A stretch of 10,182 bases of DNA, taken from Vitrella brassicaformis CCMP3155 (lineage: Eukaryota > Protista > Chromerida). Position numbers and translations under genes: made by a program. The DNA lies in assembly GCA_001179505.1 (NCBI GenBank), contig CDMY01000930.1, positions 1-10,182 of the forward strand, read 5' to 3'. This document shows, piece after piece, positions 1-8,416 of the stretch; the stretch's first letter is position 1; the number at the start of each line of letters is the position of its first letter. Below the pieces are notes generated by a model. That model did not search any database, was not told the origin of the DNA, and worked only from the letters and a program-made list of their open reading frames with translations.

Positions 1-2519
1 GTCCAAACGTGCATGCGACATTCATCATATACGTGCATGCGCAGGTGTGCGCACACAGACATTCATCATATACACCCACTCTAAGTCGACACGTGCATGC
101 GCAGGTGTGCGCACACAGATATCCATCAGATACATACACCCCAAGTCCCCAGGTGTGCGCACAGAGACATGCATCAGATACACACACCCCAAGTCTAAAC
201 GTGCATGCGACATTCATCATATACGTGCATGAGCAGGTGCGCACAGAGACATGCATCAGATACACCCACTCCAAGTCCAAACGTGCATGCGCAGGTATGC
301 GCACAGCGACATTCATCAGCCACACACACCCAAGTCCAAACCTGCCAGAGACATTCATCAGGTACACCCACTCTACGGCGACACGGGCATGCGCAGGTGT
401 GCGCACACAGATGTTCATCAGCCACATACATCCCAAGTCCAAACGTGCATGCGCAGGTTCGCGCACAGAGATATGCATTATACACCCACTTCAAGTCGAC
501 ACGTGCATGCGCAGGTGTGCGCACACAGACATTCATCATATACACACACTCCAATTCCAAACGTGCATGCGCAGGTGTGCGCACAGAGATATGCATTATA
601 CACTTACTTCAAGTCGACACGTGCATGCGCAGGTGTGCGTACACAGACATTCCTCAGATACACACACTCCAAGTCCAAACGTGCATGCGCAGGTGCGCAC
701 AGAGACATGCATCAGATACACCCACTCCAAGTCCAAACGTGCATGCGCAGGTGTGCGCACAGCGACACTCATCAGCTACAGACACTCCAAGTCCAAACGT
801 GCACGCGCAGGTGGGCGCATACAGATATTCATCAGATACACCCACTCTAAGTCGACACGTGCATGCGCAGGTGTGCGCACAGAGACATTCATCAGATATT
901 CACACCCCAAGTCCAAACGTGCACGCGCAGTGTTCGCACAGCGACATTCATCAGCTACAGACACTCCATGCCGAGACAAGAAGCGCCTCTGCACTGACTG
1001 TGTCAACTGCAAGCGCGGTACGTGCACAAAGTGATGATGGGGCGGGGATCGATCTCTCCTCTTCTGGCTGAGTGTGTTTATGGGACCAAAATTCATGAGT
1101 CATACGGACACACAGACAAGTGTTACGGTCAATGCAAGTTATCTCTCGCTACAGACACCCCAAGTCCAAATCTGCATGCGGAGGTGTGCGCACACAGACA
1201 TTTATCAGATACGCACACCCCAAGTGCAAACGTGCACGCGCAGTGTGCGCACAGCGACATTCATCAGCTACAGACACTCCAAGTTGACGCGTGCATGCGC
1301 AGGTGTGCGCACACAGACATTCATCATATACGCCCACTCGACATCGACACGTGCATGCGCAGGTGTGCGCACAGAGACATTCATCAGATACGCACACCCC
1401 AAGTCCAAACGTGCATGCGACATTCATCATATACGTGCATGCGCAGGTGTGCGCACAGCGACATTCATCATATACACACACCCCAAGCCCAAACGTGCAT
1501 GCGCAGGTGTGCGCACTCAAACATCCATGAGATACACCCACTCCAAGTCGACACGTGCATGCGCAGGTGTGCGCACACAGATGTTCATCAGATACATACA
1601 CCTCAAGTCCAAACCTGCAGCGCAGGTGTGCGCACCCAGACATTCATCATATACACACACCCCAAGTTCAAACGTGCATGCGACATTCATCATATACGTG
1701 CATGCGCAGGTGTGCACGCAGCGACATTCATCAGATACACACACTCTAAGTCGACACGTGCATGCGCACCCACTCCAAGTCCAAACGTGCATGCGCAGGT
1801 GTGCGCATAAGGACATTCATCATATACACACACCCCAAGTCCAAAGCTGCATGCGCAGGTGTGCGCACACAGACATTCATCATATACACACACTCCAATT
1901 CCAAACGTGCATGCGCAGGTGTGCGCACAGAGTGCGCACACAGACATTCCTCAGGTACACACACCCTTAGTCCAAACCTGCGTCCAAACCTGCATGCGCA
2001 GGTGTGCGCACACAGACATTCATCAGATACACACACCCCAAGTCCAAACGTGCATGCGCAGTGTGCGCACAGCGACACTCATCAGCTACAGACACTCCAA
2101 GTCCAAACCTGCATGCGCAGGTGTGCGCATACAGATAGATATTCATCAGATACACCCACTCTAAGTCGACACGTGCATGCGCAGGTGTGCGCACACAGAC
2201 ATTCATCAGATACACACACCCCAAGTCCAAATGTGCATGCGACATTCATCATATACGTGCATGCGCAGGTATGCGCACAGAGACATGCATCAAATACAGC
2301 CACTCCAAGTCCAAACCTGCATGCGCAGGTGTGCGCACACAGACATTCCTCAGATACACACACTCCAAGCCGACACGTGCATGCGCACACCTCAAATCCG
2401 CAGGTGTGCGCACACAGATATTTATCAGATGTGCAGGTGTGCGGACAGACACACTCCCTTCAACTCGACGCTTCCGTGTAGGTGCAGGTGAGCGCACAGA
2501 AAGTCTCATCATATGCAAC
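1..2519 (+). repeat. Satellite block A (forward orientation)
   Basis: Monomers read ...CCAAGTCCAAACGTGCATGCGCAGGTGTGCGCAC... on +. They degenerate over ~2380-2519. Confidence 0.93.
969..1147 (+). other. 179-bp non-satellite insertion inside the array (captured genomic or mobile-element fragment) flanked by a 15-bp direct duplication
   Basis: Unique sequence lies between GCTACAGACACTCCA (954-968) and GCTACAGACACCCCA (1148-1162; 1 mismatch). The first 16 codons encode CRDKKRLCTDCVNCKR, followed by G|GTACGT (donor-like, 1018) or read-through GTCTK-stop (1032-1034). Confidence 0.85.
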
Positions 2520-3818
2520 GACTTGGAGTGTGTGTATAGACTTGGAGTGTGTGTCTACGATGAGTCCCTCTATGCGCACACCTATGCATGCACGCGTCGA
2601 CCTGGCTGTGCGCACACCTACGCATGCACGCGTCGACCTGGAGTGTGTGTATAGGAAAAATGTCTCTGCGCGCACACCTGCGTATGCACGTTTGGACTTG
2701 GTTTGGACTTGGTTTGGACTTGGAGTGTGTGTATATGATGAGTGTCTCTGTGCGCACACCTACGCATTCACGCGTCGACCTGCGGTGTGTGTATAGGAAA
2801 AATGTCTCTGCGCGCATACCTGCGTATGCACGTTTGGACTTGGTTTGGACTTGGAGAGTGTGTATATGATGAATGTCTCTGTCGGCATACCTGCGCATGC
2901 ACGCGTCGAATTGGAGTGTGTGTATATAGAAAATGTTTCTGCGCGAACGGCTCCGCATGCACGGCTCCGCATGCACGTGTGGGCTTTGAGTGTTTGTATG
3001 CGATGAATGTCTCTGTGTGTACACCTGCGCATGCACGTTTGGACTTGGAGTGCGTGTATATGACGAATGTCTCTGTGCGCACACTTACGCATGCACGCGT
3101 CGTCTTGGAGTGTGTGTATATGATGAATATCTCTGTGCGCACACCTGCGCATGCACGCGTGGACTTGGAGTGTGTGTATATGATGAATGTCTCTGTGCGC
3201 ACGCCTGCGCATGGACACTTTGACTTGGAGTGTGTCCGCTGTGGTTGTTTGGGCTTGGAAAGTACAGATATGATGAATATTTCTGTGCGCACACATGCGC
3301 ATGCGCCTTTGGGCTTAGGATGTGCGGATATGATGAATATCTCTTTGCGCACACCTGCGCATGCTCGCGTCGACTTGGGGTGTGTCTACATAGTGAATGT
3401 CTCTGTGTGCACACCTGGCATGCACCTTTGTCCTTGGAGTGTGTGTATATGATGAATGTCTCTGTGCGCGCACCTGTGCATACACGCGTGGGCTCGGAGT
3501 GTGTGTGTATATGATGAATGTCTCTAGCGCGAATGTCTTTATGCGCACACCTGTGCATCTGCTGTATATGATGAATGTCTCTGTGCGCAAGTGCGCGTGG
3601 ACTTGGAGTATGCGCAGGTATGCGTGAACTTGGAGTGTGTATATATGATGAATGTCTTTATGCGCAGGTGCGCGTGGACTTGTAGTGTGCGCAGGTCTGC
3701 GTGAACTTGGAGTGTGTGCCACCTTCATACACCTGTGCATGCACTTTTGGACTTGGGGCGTGCGGATATGATGAATACCTCTGTGCGCACACCTGCGCAT
3801 GAACACTTGGACTTGGAG
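2520..3818 (-). repeat. Satellite block B (inverted orientation)
   Basis: Monomers read GACTTGGAGTGTGTGTATATGATGAATGTCTCTGTGCGCACACCTGCGCATGCACG on +, the reverse complement of block A. The block begins with GACTTGGAG (2520-2528) and ends with GACTTGGAG (3810-3818). Confidence 0.93.
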
Positions 3819-3937
3819 CAAGTCGACGCGTGCATGCGAAGGTGTGCGCACAAAGATATTCATCACATACACACACTCCAAGTCGAAGTCCAAGTCGAGG
3901 CGTGCATACCAATACACTCCAAATGCAAACGTGCATG
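3819..3937 (+). repeat. Satellite block C (short forward-orientation terminal segment, ~2 degenerate monomers)
   Basis: CAAGTCGACGCGTGCATGCGAAGGTGTGCGCACAAAGATATTCATCACATACACACACTCCAAGTC... Homology to the monomer ends at GTGCATG (3931-3937). Confidence 0.88.
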
Positions 3938-3938
3938 T

Positions 3939-3993
3939 ATACTCTGCGTCAGGAATGAAGAACGAATACAGCTGGCCCAAATGTGTCAACATC
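3939..3993 (-). CDS. REI1: REI1-like exon 5 (MLTHLGQLYSFFIPDAEY), abutting the satellite
   Basis: Acceptor GTATAG at 3994 after a 130-bp intron, and the phase matches exon 4. It ends either at donor GA|GTATAC (GT at 3942) or reads into the satellite. Confidence 0.85.
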
Positions 3994-4832
3994 CTATACA
4001 TATACACGAACGCGCGCACACCAACACGCAGCGACCGACGCATACACACGTCTCGCTCTCGTACGCACATGTTTCTCCTCCAGACCTCCTCCCTCCCTCC
4101 CTCCCTCTCCCTGATTGACTGACTTGTCTATGGTGTCGTGGTCCGTGCCATCGAACAGGCACTGCGTCACCTTGTACTCGACGCTGTGCGGCCGTGTCTG
4201 GCTGACAGCTGACAGTGCCTCGGCGGTACTGGACGATGCCGCACTCTTGTCGTCTTTCTCCCTGCCTCCCTTCCTCCTGTCGGTCTTCTTCAGATGACCA
4301 TCGCCCTTCACTGCGGCCTGTATGTGTAGATGTGTGTATGTACGTATGGACCCATCCACACACAGGGAGGAAGCGACAGGGGCGCGCTGCCTTGTGAGTG
4401 AGTGAGAGTACGTAAAGCCTTTCCTGGCGGCTGGCTGGGGGTCATGCAATGGCTGAATGACTGACCGTTCCGATGCAAGCAGCTCCAGCTTGCGCTCGAA
4501 CATCTGCAGAGAGATGGGACCGATGCCTGACATACTCATGTGCGAACGTAGGGTCACACATAGACGCACACACATACGGGTGTGGCTGGCGTGTGCATTA
4601 TGTATCCTCACCCACCTACTTATTCGCCACTTTGCGCTTGAGGTTGTATCTCTGCCAGTCTGTCTTGTAGTGGCTCCGCTGGTCCTCCCCATTGTCGAAC
4701 GTCGTCTGACACGCCGTGCACTGCATCATGCGATGCGTGCAGCACGACACACGCACGAACGAACACAACAAAGATTCCCTGCTTCACACAGACGGATGTC
4801 GTGTGTGTTCTGACCTTCAGAGGGCCCTCCAT
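3939..4832 (-). CDS. REI1: REI1/ZNF622-family cytoplasmic pre-60S maturation zinc-finger protein, 5' part only (5 exons, ~147 aa to PDAEY); intact versus pseudogene status unresolved
   Basis: Spliced model 4832-4815, 4720-4620, 4534-4462, 4317-4124, 3993-3939 gives MEGPLKCTACQTTFDNGEDQRSHYKTDWQRYNLKRKVAN...GPISLQMFERK...TQCLFDGTDHDTIDKMLTHLGQLYSFFIPDAEY. This matches the family signatures CxxC..F....QRxHYKTDWHRYNLKRKVA..PIS..F and CLF...HM...HSFFIPDxEY (recognised from memory of ZNF622/Rei1). Confidence 0.88.
4091..4111 (-). repeat. (GGGA)n intronic microsatellite with five G3 tracts
   Basis: CCC tracts on + at 4091, 4095, 4099, 4103 and 4109, inside REI1-like intron 4123-3994. Confidence 0.85.
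4124..4317 (-). CDS. REI1: REI1-like exon 4 (charged linker plus TQCLFDG...IDK)
   Basis: Acceptor CATACAG at 4318, donor GTCAGT at 4123 (phase 2), GC3-rich open frame. Confidence 0.85.
4462..4534 (-). CDS. REI1: REI1-like exon 3 (MSGIGPISLQMFERKLELLASERS); boundaries uncertain
   Basis: The homologous PIS..F.RK motif is in a GC3-rich frame. Keeping this frame needs a GAG acceptor (4535) and a GTCATT donor (4461). Confidence 0.6.
4620..4720 (-). CDS. REI1: REI1-like exon 2 (N-terminal zinc finger CTAC...HYKTDWQRYNLKRKVAN)
   Basis: Strong motif match. Donor GTAGGT at 4619 (phase 2); an in-frame TAG follows if unspliced. Confidence 0.9.
4815..4832 (-). CDS. REI1: REI1-like exon 1 (MEGPLK)
   Basis: ATG at 4832-4830, donor GTCAGA at 4814, 94-bp phase-0 intron to the CAG acceptor at 4721. 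An alternative start without this exon is ATG ATG at 4729. Confidence 0.65.
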
Positions 4833-5061
4833 CGTCTGTGCTGTCACTATGGCCGGTGCTTCCTGCGTAAGCCAATAAAAAAAGCGCACGAATCTTGCGA
4901 GTTTGGGGATAGTGACCGTCCAACCGTTCTCCTGCGAGCTTCGGCGTTGCAGTCCCACTGGAAGACTTCTGTCCCATCGGTCCCAACGACGAACGAATGA
5001 ATGACACCGCGGAAAGACCCTTCGACCTGATCACAATAGTGCACACGACGTGGCCGTCGCC
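4833..5061. promoter_or_regulatory. Short divergent (head-to-head) intergenic region, probable bidirectional promoter plus 5' UTRs
   Basis: There are 229 bp between the REI1-like ATG (4832, -) and the RetSat-like ATG (5062, +). No specific element was identified. Confidence 0.6.
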
Positions 5062-5413
5062 ATGGCATTTGGCGTGAGGATGGATCTGCCCTCCTGGGCT
5101 ACGGACTATCGTTTCATCGGCTGCTGTGGAGCCATTGCAGCATCTGCTGCCCTCATCAGAGCTTACCTGTCCCTCCGAGCGCCTAAACGCCACCGCACAG
5201 TGCGATGGCAGCTGCCGCCCTACGCGGAGGACATGACGCGATATGCGTACAAGGCCGCTCGTTTGCCCAAGGAGCCCACCGATTACATCGTTATTGGCTC
5301 CGGGATGGGCGGGCTTTGGCTCGCGGCTGCCTTAAGCAAATGCGGGTATACAGTGGTGGTGTTGGAGCAGCATTACATTGCCGGCGGATGCTGTCACACG
5401 TTCACGGAGAAAG
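5062..5413 (+). CDS. RETSAT: RetSat-like exon 1 (membrane anchor plus Rossmann GxGxxG)
   Basis: ATG 5062 (alternative 5080); donor GTAGGT 5414, phase 1. Confidence 0.88.
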
Positions 5414-7679
5414 GTAGGTACCTAGCAAACACAAACACACACGTGTGTATTCATACATGCACGCATAGCCTCAATGAGCCGACGATGCCTGTTTGTATTC
5501 TAGTTGCGTCAATTGCTGTGCGCGCGTGTGTTCAGGTGCATGTTTCGACACGGGTATCCACTACATTGGAGACTTGAAGGTCGCCGCGAATCTGATGGAG
5601 GTGGCGGGCGACCCCGCTGACTACCCCGTGCAGTTCCAGGAGGTTGGTCGGGAGAATGAGGACACCAGGGCAAGGGATGGGACCGGCAGGGGCCTCTACG
5701 ACGTTATCAAGTTTGGCAACGACACGGAAATCAGGTAAACAAACATACGAGCGAACCAGTCAGACAGATGGGCAATTGTGCGGATGTGTATGTGTATGTT
5801 TATGTGTGTATGTGTGTGTGTGTGCGCTTGCATGTGCATACATATGTGGGTGGGCGTTTGTTATGTGTGTATGACCATATATACCATGTAGGCTGCGTGC
5901 TGGCAAGGAGGCGTTTATGAGTGAGATGAGTCGCCACTTGCCTGCTCAGTTGGTGTCTGACTGGGTCAAGACGGTCAAGCAGGCCACCAAGACCTGGCGT
6001 ATGCTGGCCATGTCCAGGGCGTTTTCGCCTCTCGTTCAGGTCCGTCCTGCTGTTCCTACCTACCTACCTACCTACCTACCTACGCACAAACCAACCAACA
6101 ACAACAGAAGAGTGCGGTCGTCGTGTGAGTTGTGCTTACATGTCATTGTGTGTGATGTGTTGCATGCAGTGGTTTTGGCTGCGCTTGCTGGGCAGCGGGG
6201 CACTCAAGTGGGCACGGAAGACAACACGACAGGTGCGTCCTTCATCGCGCAAACAGCCCCCCCCCGTATGCATGAATCTACATACTCATGGGTATTTTCA
6301 TATGGGACGACGTGCGGGCGTGGGTGCGGTGCGTGGATGTGCATGTATGTGCAGGTGGTCCAGGAGCTTAATGGCGATATGAAGGCCGAGGGGATCCTGT
6401 CAGGCCAGTGCGTGGACTGGGGGGAGGTCCCATCAACGGCCTGCTTCCTCCTGCAGGCAGTGATCCAGCATCACTACATGCATGGCGCATGCTTCCCTGT
6501 CGGCGGGCCGCTTAGCATTGTGCGCACGCTCATCTCCACCATCCACAAGGCGGGCTCACGCGTGTTTGTGAGAGCCAAAGTCGAGAAGATCCTGGTCAAC
6601 AAAGGTACACACGTACATACATACATACATACATACACACGTACGGACAGACAGACATGCATGCATCCATATGACCTCCCAAGACAGCAGGGTGCTTGGT
6701 TGGTTGTACATGTATGTATGTATGGGTGGAGTCTTTTTCCCTGTGTGTGTGTAGGTGTGGCTGAGGGTGTGGTGCTGTCCAACGGTGACACGTTGAGGAG
6801 CAGACGGGGCGTCGTCTCGTCGGTCGGCCTATCTGCCACATTGGTAGGGAGGCAGGCAGGATCACAACACGTGCAGGCAGGCTACGCATGCAACAACATG
6901 TGCATGTATGCACTTCCCAAGCCTCTCGCTCCCTTTGACATGTGTGCGTGCGCGCGTGTGGGTGTGTGGGTGCGGTGTATGGTTCACACAGGGTCATCTG
7001 TTGTCGAGTGAGGATGTCGATCGATACATGTCGGCAGAGGCCAGGCTGCTGAAGGATGTGGGTGAGGGGGTCAGCAATGTGTGCGCGTTCGTCACGCTGC
7101 AGGGCAGCTCAGATGAGCTGAGGCTGCCCACCAGCAACCTGCACTACTGGCCCGAAATGCCAACAGAGGTGAAGAGTAGAATGAAAAAGGCAGACAAACA
7201 GACAGAGGCTGGCTAGGGCAGTCTATGGGTGCAACTGTTGTGGGTTGGTGTCTGTCTGTCTGTCTGTCTGCTTTGTGCCTTCATACATACGCACATACAC
7301 ACCTATATAGGGTCGTGGTCTTGATGCCGTGGCTGTCAAGTACGCCGAGGCGCTGCTGGACGTCGACGCACACGATGCAGCGTACTTCATCTGTGAGCTG
7401 GCTGGCTGGGTGGCTGCATGGATGGACGCACGCACACACGCACGTGTCTTGTCCTATCTGACTTGGTGTGCGCATACATGCATCCATCTACCAATCAGCA
7501 TTTCCTTCCGCGAAGGACCCTGAGTACGACGCTCGTCACCCTGGCACGTCCACATGCGAAATGCTCATGGAGACCACATCAGGCATGTTCGAACAGCTAA
7601 ATGAAGGTAGGTAGAAGGACGACATCCGCTCGCTCGTGTGATGCATGTTCGTATGGTTGCATGGATGAATGCATGCATC

Positions 7680-7716
<37 letters not shown>

Positions 7717-8416
7717 CTCTTGGAGGCGCGCGCACGACCCGTCGCACGGCAGCGTACAAGGACGTGAAGAAGCTGCTAGTGGACAAGTTCAGGAGGTGTT
7801 TGACCGAGCACTTCCCTCACTTACAAGGTGACCCCGGATACTAACAACGTCGTCCATGGATGCCTCACTAGATAGCTGTCTGTGTTCCTGAATGCCTGTC
7901 TTCCTGGCTGCGCTGCCTGCAGACAAGATCGTGAGCATTGAAGTGTCTACGCCATTGTCGATGCACCACTACCTTCAGCGTTTCTCCACCTACGGGCTCC
8001 GCCACACGCCCGAGCGCATAGCGAATCCGGTGCCGCGTGTGGGGACGGGCATAAGGAGGCTCTACCTCAGCGGACAGGACCTCATCACAGAAGGCTGGAT
8101 GGGTATGTATGTATGTAAACACACACGCACATTCAGGGCAACACACTTGGCTTGCTTCACGTGTGTGTGGTGTGGGTGGGTGGGTGGGTGGGTGGCTGGC
8201 ATCCCTCACTCAGCTGCCGTGTATTCGGGCATGGTTGCTGCCACGCACCTTCTCGGCTACACGCCTTGGGACCTCGTCAGCGGCCGTTTGTTCCTGGACG
8301 ACCTGGCCAAGATACCAAACCCGCCATCCATCGCACAGCTAGAGGAGGCAGCAGCGGCAGCGGCAGCGGTTGGCGGCGACAAGAAGGGGCAGGAGGGAGC
8401 GCGAGTGGGGGCTTAG
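5062..8416 (+). CDS. RETSAT: Retinol saturase-like (all-trans-retinol 13,14-reductase / phytoene dehydrogenase-CRTISO superfamily) FAD oxidoreductase, 12 exons, 653 aa
   Basis: Exons 5062-5413, 5536-5734, 5892-6039, 6170-6232, 6355-6604, 6755-6843, 6992-7168, 7311-7392, 7499-7606, 7717-7827, 7923-8102 and 8214-8416 sum to 1962 nt. All 11 introns are GT-YAG with matching phases. Motifs: YIVIGSGMGGL..AA.L...G..V.VLEQHYIAGGCCHTF..KG..FDTGIHYIG, HY..GA.FPVGG, FISFPSAKDP, STPLS..HYL, LYLSGQD. An N-terminal hydrophobic anchor is present, and an upstream in-frame TGA lies at 5002. Confidence 0.93.
5536..5734 (+). CDS. RETSAT: RetSat-like exon 2 (FDTGIHYIG)
   Basis: Acceptor CAG 5535; donor GTAAAC 5735, phase 2. 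Confidence 0.92.
5892..6039 (+). CDS. RETSAT: RetSat-like exon 3
   Basis: Acceptor TAG 5891; donor GTCCGT 6040, phase 0. Confidence 0.85.
6055..6082. repeat. (CCTA)7 microsatellite, RetSat intron 3
   Basis: Direct reading. Confidence 0.95.
6170..6232 (+). CDS. RETSAT: RetSat-like exon 4 (63 nt, WFWLRLLGSGALKWARKTTRQ)
   Basis: Acceptor CAG 6169; donor GTGCGT 6233. Symmetric phase 0 with flanking introns of 130 and 122 bp. Confidence 0.75.
6355..6604 (+). CDS. RETSAT: RetSat-like exon 5 (LSGQCVDWG...HHYMHGACFPVGG...AKVEKILV)
   Basis: Acceptor CAG 6354; donor GTACAC 6605, phase 1. Confidence 0.92.
6614..6637. repeat. (TACA)6 microsatellite, RetSat intron 5
   Basis: Direct reading. Confidence 0.95.
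6755..6843 (+). CDS. RETSAT: RetSat-like exon 6
   Basis: Acceptor TAG 6754; donor GTAGGG 6844, phase 0. Confidence 0.88.
6992..7168 (+). CDS. RETSAT: RetSat-like exon 7
   Basis: Acceptor CAG 6991; donor GTGAAG 7169, phase 0. Confidence 0.85.
7311..7392 (+). CDS. RETSAT: RetSat-like exon 8
   Basis: Acceptor TAG 7310; donor GTGAGC 7393, phase 1. Confidence 0.83.
7499..7606 (+). CDS. RETSAT: RetSat-like exon 9 (SFPSAKDP)
   Basis: Acceptor CAG 7498; donor GTAGGT 7607, phase 1. This exon is absent from the ORF track. Confidence 0.92.
7686..7713. repeat. (TG)14 microsatellite directly before the intron 9 acceptor
   Basis: Direct reading. Confidence 0.95.
7717..7827 (+). CDS. RETSAT: RetSat-like exon 10 (RRTAAYKDVK...FPHL)
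   Basis: Acceptor CAG 7716; donor GTGACC 7828, phase 1. Confidence 0.9.
7923..8102 (+). CDS. RETSAT: RetSat-like exon 11 (STPLSMHHYL...LYLSGQD)
   Basis: Acceptor CAG 7922; donor GTATGT 8103, phase 1. Confidence 0.92.
8173..8195 (+). repeat. (TGGG)5 microsatellite, RetSat intron 11
   Basis: Direct reading; GGG tracts at 8174, 8178, 8182, 8186 and 8190. Confidence 0.95.
8214..8416 (+). CDS. RETSAT: RetSat-like exon 12, with low-complexity poly-Ala tail
   Basis: Acceptor CAG 8213; stop TAG 8414-8416; EEAAAAAAAV encoded by GCA/GCG repeats. Confidence 0.88.

What the first reader, a model, noticed from the sequence alone, without database searches (positions are those of the whole stretch)
3315..3993. 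REI1/ZNF622 gene runs into the satellite: giant satellite-filled intron or truncated gene-satellite fusion
Seen: the conserved SFFIPDAEY motif ends at 3939 and satellite sequence starts at ~3937. The expected continuation of the family (recalled as L.D..GL..YL..K plus a further CxxC finger) is not in the window. Two readings fit. (a) Donor GA|GTATAC at 3942 opens an intron of at least 3.9 kb made of satellite, 25-40 times the 94-157 bp introns elsewhere here, which would need splicing through an inverted repeat. (b) The gene is broken, and the frame stays open for 207 more codons of satellite-derived His/Arg/Thr-rich sequence to a stop at 3317-3315, giving a chimeric protein. Established: Rei1/ZNF622 is a conserved 60S maturation factor, so either outcome is notable.
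Basis: partly seen in the sequence, partly recalled or inferred. Interest (0 to 1): 0.75.

Follow-up and report, generated by a model that had tools for sequence, protein, structure and literature searches.

The report
Truncated second REI1 copy beside satellite
This is the front third of a spare copy of a ribosome-maturation gene (REI1/ZNF622) in the alga Vitrella brassicaformis, cut in mid-exon by a common 60-bp satellite at the end of a short-read scaffold; a complete REI1 gene sits on another scaffold, so the case is fairly ordinary.

Summary
On the minus strand, REI1-like exons end with SFFIPDAEY at 3939. A 60-bp satellite starts at about 3935, and the frame stays open to the stop at 3317-3315.

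The context changes the reading:
- The window is the whole 10,182-bp scaffold C930 of the short-read Vitrella brassicaformis CCMP3155 assembly, and the satellite runs to the scaffold end.
- A complete 396-aa REI1/ZNF622 gene (P0001) lies on scaffold C425.
- The window copy matches P0001 residues 9-145 only, at 75% amino-acid identity.
- Similarity stops 27 nt before the paralogue's exon ends, and inside the PF12756 domain.
- Residues 150-396 have no second copy anywhere in the assembly.
- dN/dS between the copies is 0.16 and their amino-acid rates are equal. The window copy was therefore a constrained second paralogue for most of its history, not a dead-on-arrival fragment.
- Open runs of 150 codons or more occur in all six frames of the satellite, so the open frame says nothing about coding.

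Best reading (0.6): a recently truncated gene remnant. Rivals are a 3' half missing from the assembly, which includes the giant-intron reading (0.22), and an expressed short or chimeric protein (0.13). No RNA evidence could be reached.

The parts
4620..4729 (-). Exon 1 of the REI1-like copy. It reads MMQCTACQTTFDNGEDQRSHYKTDWQRYNLKRKVAN and holds the N-terminal C2H2 finger, with Gln in place of the last His zinc ligand.
   Evidence: yeast Rei1 E 3.8e-10; human ZNF622 E 2.7e-9. In one search, all 8 homologues have His where the window has Gln.
4535..4619 (-). Intron 1 in the only frame-keeping model (donor AA|GTAGGT, acceptor catgAG|T). The ancestral donor G|GTGAGG at 4612|4611 is now preceded by an in-frame TAG (4618-4616).
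   Evidence: Sequence reading compared with the C425 gene. This is inference; no RNA data were available.
4462..4534 (-). Exon 2. It reads (N)MSGIGPISLQMFERKLELLASERS and carries the conserved motif that follows finger 1.
   Evidence: The stretch 4488-4532 is 91% identical in DNA to C425.
4318..4461 (-). Intron 2 (donor TCA|GTCATT). The ancestral-type donor CG|GTCAGT 4 nt upstream is out of phase because of a 1-nt difference from C425.
   Evidence: Sequence reading. This is inference.
4124..4317 (-). Exon 3. It holds the linker and the start of the PF12756 region (AAVKGDGHLKK...VEYKVTQCLFDGTDHDTIDK).
   Evidence: 72% amino-acid identity to C425 exon 3, E 6e-23.
3994..4123 (-). Intron 3 (donor AA|GTCAGT, acceptor tgtatag|G). 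It sits at the same position and phase as in the C425 gene.
3939..3993 (-). Exon 4 remnant ((K)MLTHLGQLYSFFIPDAEY). It equals P0001 residues 128-145, and the paralogue's exon goes on for 27 more nt.
3935..3940 (.). Breakpoint between the gene and the satellite. Similarity to C425 ends at 3940 and satellite similarity begins at 3935. There is no N and no clear microhomology.
3315..3938 (-). Read-through open frame in the satellite (207 codons plus stop). It has no similarity to the rest of REI1 and is treated as non-coding.
17..3935 (.). Array of a 60-bp satellite that occurs genome-wide, in four blocks: 17-968 (+), 1148-2430 (+), 2540-3818 (-) and 3819-3935 (+). It runs to the scaffold end.
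969..1147 (.). Non-satellite insert inside the array. It is made of pieces of two dispersed repeats and is not a REI1 exon.

Best explanation
Vitrella brassicaformis carries two REI1/ZNF622 paralogues. The complete gene is on scaffold C425 (P0001, 396 aa) and presumably does the 60S maturation work. The copy in this window was a second paralogue that stayed under purifying selection for most of the time since the duplication.

As assembled, this copy keeps only exons 1-4, equal to P0001 residues 9-145. It is joined in mid-exon and mid-domain to an array of an abundant 60-bp satellite. The most likely cause is a non-homologous rearrangement or deletion in a satellite-rich region, which removed the last two thirds of the gene. 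What was lost is most of the PF12756 domain, the canonical C2H2 finger, and the C-terminal part that in yeast Rei1/Reh1 enters the ribosomal exit tunnel.

The remnant is most likely a young pseudogene. The open frame through the satellite is a by-product of a 60-bp, stop-poor repeat.

Shown: the anatomy, the paralogue, the absence of the 3' half from the assembly, and the past constraint. Inferred: the mechanism of the break, its recency, and the loss of function.
For: - The window is the whole scaffold C930. The assembly size of 72,700,666 bp in 1064 scaffolds matches the Vitrella CCMP3155 assembly (PMC4501334), and P0001 is named as Vitrella.
- P0001 is a bona fide REI1: PF12756 scores 101.5 bits and yeast Rei1 matches at E 3e-32.
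- The window copy aligns to P0001 residues 9-145 only. Similarity stops at window 3940, which is P0001 residue 145. The C425 exon continues there, and all 8 homologues continue with L.D..GL.
- An own-genome search with P0001 finds residues 150-396 only on C425. Searches with exons 5 and 6 give the same result. Controls with exons 3 and 4 recover C930 at 72% and 70% identity.
- dN/dS is 0.16 (bootstrap 0.10-0.26) with dS 0.8 over 133 codons.
- Derived amino-acid changes are 7 versus 7 against the Chromera outgroup.
- Signs of relaxed constraint: the invariant zinc-ligand His is replaced by Gln. The ancestral splice sites of introns 1 and 2 no longer keep the frame.
- The satellite gives at least 325 matches on more than 30 scaffolds, often at scaffold ends.
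- Open runs of 150 codons or more occur in all six frames of the satellite.
- No second Vitrella REI1-like protein appears among 5.8 billion proteins.
Against: - No frameshift or unavoidable stop lies within exons 1-4, and a canonical frame-keeping splice model exists. The remnant is therefore not demonstrably dead.
- Equal amino-acid rates mean the truncation must be recent. That is a coincidence in time, which makes an assembly problem or continued function harder to dismiss.
- The scaffold comes from a velvet k=75 short-read assembly with gap-filling, and it ends in the satellite, so what lies beyond is unknown.
Confidence: 0.6

Rival explanations
1. The paralogue is intact in the organism, and its 3' half is missing from or misplaced in the short-read assembly. 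One version is that the satellite sits inside the gene as a very large intron. Another is that the exon-satellite junction is a local mis-assembly or gap-filling artefact.
For: - Strong past constraint and equal amino-acid rates fit a gene that is still functional.
- The scaffold is only 10 kb and ends in the satellite.
- The assembly was made with velvet k=75, SSPACE, GapFiller and IMAGE. Scaffolds under 1 kb and 620 'bacterial' scaffolds were dropped, and 0.93 Mb of N remains.
- A GT (GA|GTATAC) lies at the break.
Against: - No second copy of residues 150-396 exists anywhere in 72.7 Mb, although 70-72% identical exons were readily detected. A 3' half adjoining unique DNA should have been assembled.
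- The break is in mid-exon relative to the paralogue and in mid-domain relative to 8 homologues. An intron here would have to be new and at least 25 times the local intron size.
- The junction has no N. I saw no gene-satellite sequence in common longer than scattered 5- to 6-mers, read by eye only, that could mislead a k=75 assembler.
- No full-length second protein appears in the protein database.
Confidence: 0.22
2. The truncated gene is expressed and useful. It would give a short protein with finger 1, the GIGPISLQMFERKL motif and the linker. It would end either in satellite-encoded His/Arg/Thr-rich sequence or at an early polyadenylation site, and might act as a 60S-binding or regulatory fragment.
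For: - The ORF is intact through exons 1-4 under a canonical splice model.
- dN/dS is low, including in the 18 codons of exon 4.
- The frame is open for 207 further codons.
Against: - The open frame is expected by chance in this satellite.
- A third of a PF12756 domain is unlikely to fold, yet it shows the same constraint as the rest. This points to a domain that was complete until recently.
- The last zinc ligand of finger 1 is lost.
- No protein of 128-693 aa carrying these exons is in the database.
- The tail has no similarity to REI1 or to any Pfam family.
Confidence: 0.13
3. The copy is a dead-on-arrival partial duplicate: only the 5' part of REI1 was ever copied next to the satellite, and it has drifted neutrally since.
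For: Only the 5' 37% of the gene is present, and no synteny with C425 is seen around it.
Against: Neutral drift on one branch would give dN/dS of about 0.5 or more. The observed value is 0.16, and none of 2000 bootstraps reached 0.5. The window copy shows no excess of amino-acid changes. At dS of about 0.8, no frameshift has accumulated in four exons.
Confidence: 0.04

Closest known systems
Yeast Rei1/Reh1 and Arabidopsis REIL1/REIL2 paralogue pairs (cytoplasmic 60S maturation factors)
   Same: It has the same family N-terminal finger and RYNLKRKVA motif. As in yeast and Arabidopsis, there is a second paralogue beside the main gene (PMC13732680, PMC11791190, PMC7844247).
   Different: The second copy here lacks two thirds of the protein. 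[quoted passage not shown] The duplication is specific to the Vitrella lineage: the copies are 75% identical to each other, against 44% for P0001 to the Chromera protein.
Truncated genes and gene fragments at satellite or repeat-island borders (unitary or duplicate pseudogenes made by rearrangement)
   Same: A coding sequence is cut at an arbitrary point and joined directly to tandem repeats in a repeat-rich part of the genome. The same satellite was noted by this scan at other cut-off coding pieces (s1-218439).
   Different: The fragment shows long past purifying selection and no clear disabling mutation, so the break is young or the picture is incomplete.
Vitrella brassicaformis REI1/ZNF622 gene on scaffold C425 (P0001)
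   Same: It shares 75% amino-acid identity over 133 aligned codons, and three intron positions and phases are the same.
   Different: The C425 gene has three more introns in the shared region (before Cys9, in Trp30, in Arg52). It keeps the zinc-ligand His and has all 396 residues.

Membership tests
REI1/ZNF622/REH1 (cytoplasmic 60S subunit biogenesis factors) | N-terminal C2H2 finger followed by the (W/F)H(R/V)YN(L/T)KRKVA motif | tested here: met
   exon 1 matches yeast Rei1 residues 8-40 at E 3.8e-10 and human ZNF622 at E 2.7e-9. One caveat: the last His ligand is Gln in the window copy, while it is His in all 8 homologues.
REI1/ZNF622/REH1 (cytoplasmic 60S subunit biogenesis factors) | Complete central zf-C2H2_2 domain (PF12756, two fingers) | tested here: not met
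   Only the part equal to P0001 residues 114-145 of the 114-212 domain is present. The exons give no Pfam hit (in one search my exon-3 reference was one base out of frame, so one search is the valid test). P0001 itself scores 101.5 bits.
REI1/ZNF622/REH1 (cytoplasmic 60S subunit biogenesis factors) | C-terminal region, including the tail that enters the 60S exit tunnel | tested here: not met
   P0001 residues 150-396 match nothing on C930 and nothing elsewhere except C425. The read-through frame has no similarity.
REI1/ZNF622/REH1 (cytoplasmic 60S subunit biogenesis factors) | Binding to pre-60S particles and a role in Arx1/eL24 steps | not testable with these tools
   This needs biochemistry.
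Satellite DNA (non-coding tandem repeat family) | Head-to-tail units of fixed length, in many arrays across the genome, with no consistent coding frame | tested here: met
   TRF gives a 60-bp period with higher-order periods. There are at least 325 matches on more than 30 scaffolds. Both orientations occur with head-to-head switches, and all six frames show long open runs.
Mobile element carrying the satellite (transposon insertion into the exon) | Conserved terminal sequences or target-site duplications at array borders | tested here: not met
   78 array flanks of 200 nt share no common terminus. Only one border is visible in the window, so target-site duplication could not be tested there.
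Processed (retro-) pseudogene | Loss of all introns and a poly(A) tract | tested here: not met
   Three introns are kept at positions and phases shared with C425. However, three other introns of the C425 gene are absent from the window copy.

The most novel reading that the evidence does not exclude
The truncated paralogue is a living gene. A REI1 N-terminal module (finger 1, the GIGPISLQMFERKL motif and the linker) would have acquired a new C-terminus encoded by satellite DNA, or would be spliced across an intron of at least 3.9 kb made only of inverted satellite. Either would be an example of satellite exonisation or a satellite-filled intron in a chromerid ribosome-biogenesis factor.
Probability: 0.1. 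Interest if true: 0.6.

Novelty: new member of a known kind. Interest (0 to 1): 0.22.

Why it matters
The main value is for annotation. Vitrella has an intact REI1 gene on another scaffold, so this locus is not a broken essential gene. The satellite-encoded 'protein' should not be annotated.

One modest point of interest remains. The fragment records a second REI1 paralogue that was kept by selection for a long time, as Rei1/Reh1 are in yeast, and that now ends in a satellite. If long reads confirm the junction, it is a dated example of a satellite-rich region destroying a gene in a chromerid. If they do not, it flags a mis-assembled scaffold end.

Tried and rejected
- **Pfam on single exons.** Exon 1 gave only a weak zf-C2H2_jaz hit and exons 2-4 gave nothing. 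In one search my exon 3 reference was one base out of frame; I repeated it correctly.
- **The 179-bp 'Cys-rich exon-like' insert at 969-1147 as the missing next REI1 exon.** Rejected. It has no similarity to P0001, and it is made of two dispersed repeats with more than 40 copies.
- **PF12756-like hits on C249 as the missing 3' half.** Rejected. They are generic U1-type C2H2 fingers in another protein.
- **The C40 hit.** It is only an N-terminal Rei1-like finger in another gene.
- **A mobile element with fixed ends carrying the satellite.** No shared flank was found.
- **Dating the junction from a near-identical parent array.** None was found. Matches are of unit length at 82-94% identity and break at the inversion point 3818/3819.
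- **A newer long-read Vitrella assembly.** The literature search found none.
- **Joined spliced model.** Exons were searched one by one by reference, and codon statistics were summed piece by piece.
- **Searches left unused.** I did not use the third word search or the large representative search. The family and the absence of a full-length relative were already settled.

Full report
**Where the window comes from.** The window is the whole scaffold C930 (10,182 bp) of an assembly of 72,700,666 bp in 1064 scaffolds. These figures are exactly those published for Vitrella brassicaformis CCMP3155 (PMC4501334). The closest database protein is named as coming from that organism. The assembly was built from short reads with velvet at k=75, then SSPACE, GapFiller, IMAGE and REAPR. 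Only scaffolds above 1 kb were kept, and 0.93 Mb of N remains. The window itself contains no N.

**The observation.**
- On the minus strand there is a four-exon REI1-like reading frame. Exon 1 is 4729-4620, exon 2 about 4534-4462, exon 3 4317-4124 and exon 4 3993-3939.
- Exon 1 matches yeast Rei1 residues 8-40 at E 3.8e-10 and human ZNF622 at E 2.7e-9.
- Exon 4 reads MLTHLGQLYSFFIPDAEY and ends at 3939.
- A satellite probe maps to 17-968 (+), 1148-2430 (+), 2540-3818 (-) and 3819-3935 (+) (periods).
- The frame then runs open to the stop at 3317-3315.

**A complete paralogue exists.**
- A Pfam PF12756 search of the genome pointed to scaffold C425. Reading that locus showed a full multi-exon gene.
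- Its annotated product P0001 has 396 aa. It scores 101.5 bits on PF12756 and E 3e-32 against yeast Rei1.
- Its nearest relatives are REI1-type proteins of Chromera (44% identity) and Perkinsus.
- The window copy aligns to P0001 residues 9-145 only.
- In C425 the exon that holds SFFIPDAEY continues for 27 nt (LVDIKGLLR) before its donor site.
- In all eight aligned homologues EY is followed at once by L.D..GL, then by the C..C finger.
- DNA similarity between the copies stops at window 3940.

The break therefore lies inside an exon and inside the PF12756 domain. About 32 of the 99 domain positions are left.

**Is the rest of the gene anywhere?**
- Own-genome six-frame searches with C425 exons 5 and 6 found only C425. 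A search with the whole of P0001 gave the same result.
- The same kind of search with exons 3 and 4 recovered the window copy at 72% and 70% identity. A diverged 3' half would therefore have been seen.
- The weak PF12756 hits on C249 are unrelated U1-type fingers.
- The C40 hit is only an N-terminal finger in another gene.
- No second Vitrella REI1-like protein of 128-693 aa is in the 5.8-billion-protein collection.

**History of the copy.**
- Over 133 aligned codons, treated exon by exon, the two copies are 75% identical in protein and 80% in DNA.
- dS is 0.80, dN is 0.13 and dN/dS is 0.16. The bootstrap interval is 0.10-0.26, and none of 2000 replicates reached 0.5.
- With the Chromera protein as outgroup, derived amino-acid changes are 7 on each copy. 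Two of the seven window changes are alignment artefacts at the start of my exon 2.
- The window copy was therefore under purifying selection for most of the time since duplication. It is not a dead-on-arrival fragment.
- It does carry blemishes. The last zinc ligand of finger 1 is Gln, although it is His in all homologues.
- The ancestral donor of intron 1 is now preceded by an in-frame TAG.
- The ancestral-type donor of intron 2 is out of phase by one base.
- A frame-keeping set of canonical sites still exists, so none of these blemishes is decisive.

**The satellite.**
- It is a genome-wide family: at least 325 matches from one probe on more than 30 scaffolds, and 936 from another probe. Matches are frequently at scaffold ends.
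- Arrays of 0.2-4 kb often switch orientation head-to-head. The inverted arrangement in the window is therefore typical.
- Array flanks share no common terminus. I see no sign of a defined mobile element.
- Because the unit is 60 bp and poor in stop codons, open runs of 150 codons or more occur in all six frames. There are 15 such runs, the longest of 343 codons, and 6% of random entry points read 207 codons or more.
- The read-through has no similarity to REI1 or to any Pfam family.
I confirmed only that the arrays are there.

**Reading.**
- *Truncated remnant (0.6).* The evidence best fits a second REI1 paralogue that lost its last two thirds through a rearrangement in a satellite-rich region. 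It is now a young remnant, and the C425 gene supplies the function.
- *3' half missing from the assembly (0.22).* The giant-intron reading needs a new intron at a mid-exon position. It also needs a 3' half that is missing from the assembly. I group it with the general possibility that the 3' half was not assembled.
- *Dead-on-arrival duplicate (0.04).* This is disfavoured by the codon statistics.

**Limits.**
- The splice model rests on sequence and on comparison with the paralogue only.
Exons were handled one by one by reference.
- Reads were not available, so the junction at 3935-3940 is unverified.

**Verdict.** The feature is real and correctly observed, with an ordinary explanation: a truncated duplicate gene at a satellite border on a short-read scaffold end. 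It is a new member of a known kind, of low to modest interest.

Noticed in passing
window 969-1147: The non-satellite insert inside the array is a mosaic of two dispersed repeats. Bases 5-66 of the probe match at least 10 loci at 87-96% identity. Bases 67-183 match at least 30 loci at 74-77%, many within a few hundred bases of scaffold ends. It is not a unique captured exon.
   Followed up: partly
L006 5600-6130 (C425) versus window 4462-4729: The complete REI1 gene has three introns that the window copy lacks: before Cys9, inside the Trp30 codon and inside the Arg52 codon. The next three introns are shared in position and phase. I did not resolve whether this reflects intron loss in one copy or gain in the other.
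   Followed up: no
alignment of P0001-P0008: In the chromerid and Perkinsus homologues aligned, and in most of the unnamed relatives aligned with them, the first finger of the PF12756 domain is degenerate. It reads C-L-F-D instead of C-x-x-C, and Y-M...Y/F-S-F-F instead of H...H. The 'missing' ligands in the window copy are therefore a lineage trait and not decay.
   Followed up: partly
window 5050-8416 (+): A multi-exon gene lies head-to-head with the REI1 copy. Its first exon shows a typical FAD/NAD(P)-binding GxGxxG start (DYIVIGSGMGGLWLAAALSKCGYTVVVLEQH), like phytoene-desaturase or retinol-saturase type oxidoreductases.
   Followed up: no
loci L014-L033 (scaffolds C508, C703, C622, C492, C771, C630 and others): Arrays of the 60-bp satellite cluster in repeat islands, and adjacent blocks often meet head-to-head in opposite orientation. 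Several small scaffolds consist mostly of this satellite.
   Followed up: partly
G000:C40:23294-23428 (-): Another gene carries a Rei1-like N-terminal finger, 40% identical to P0001 residues 7-51. Since Vms1 also matched in the PDB searches, it may be the Vms1/ANKZF1 homologue.
   Followed up: no
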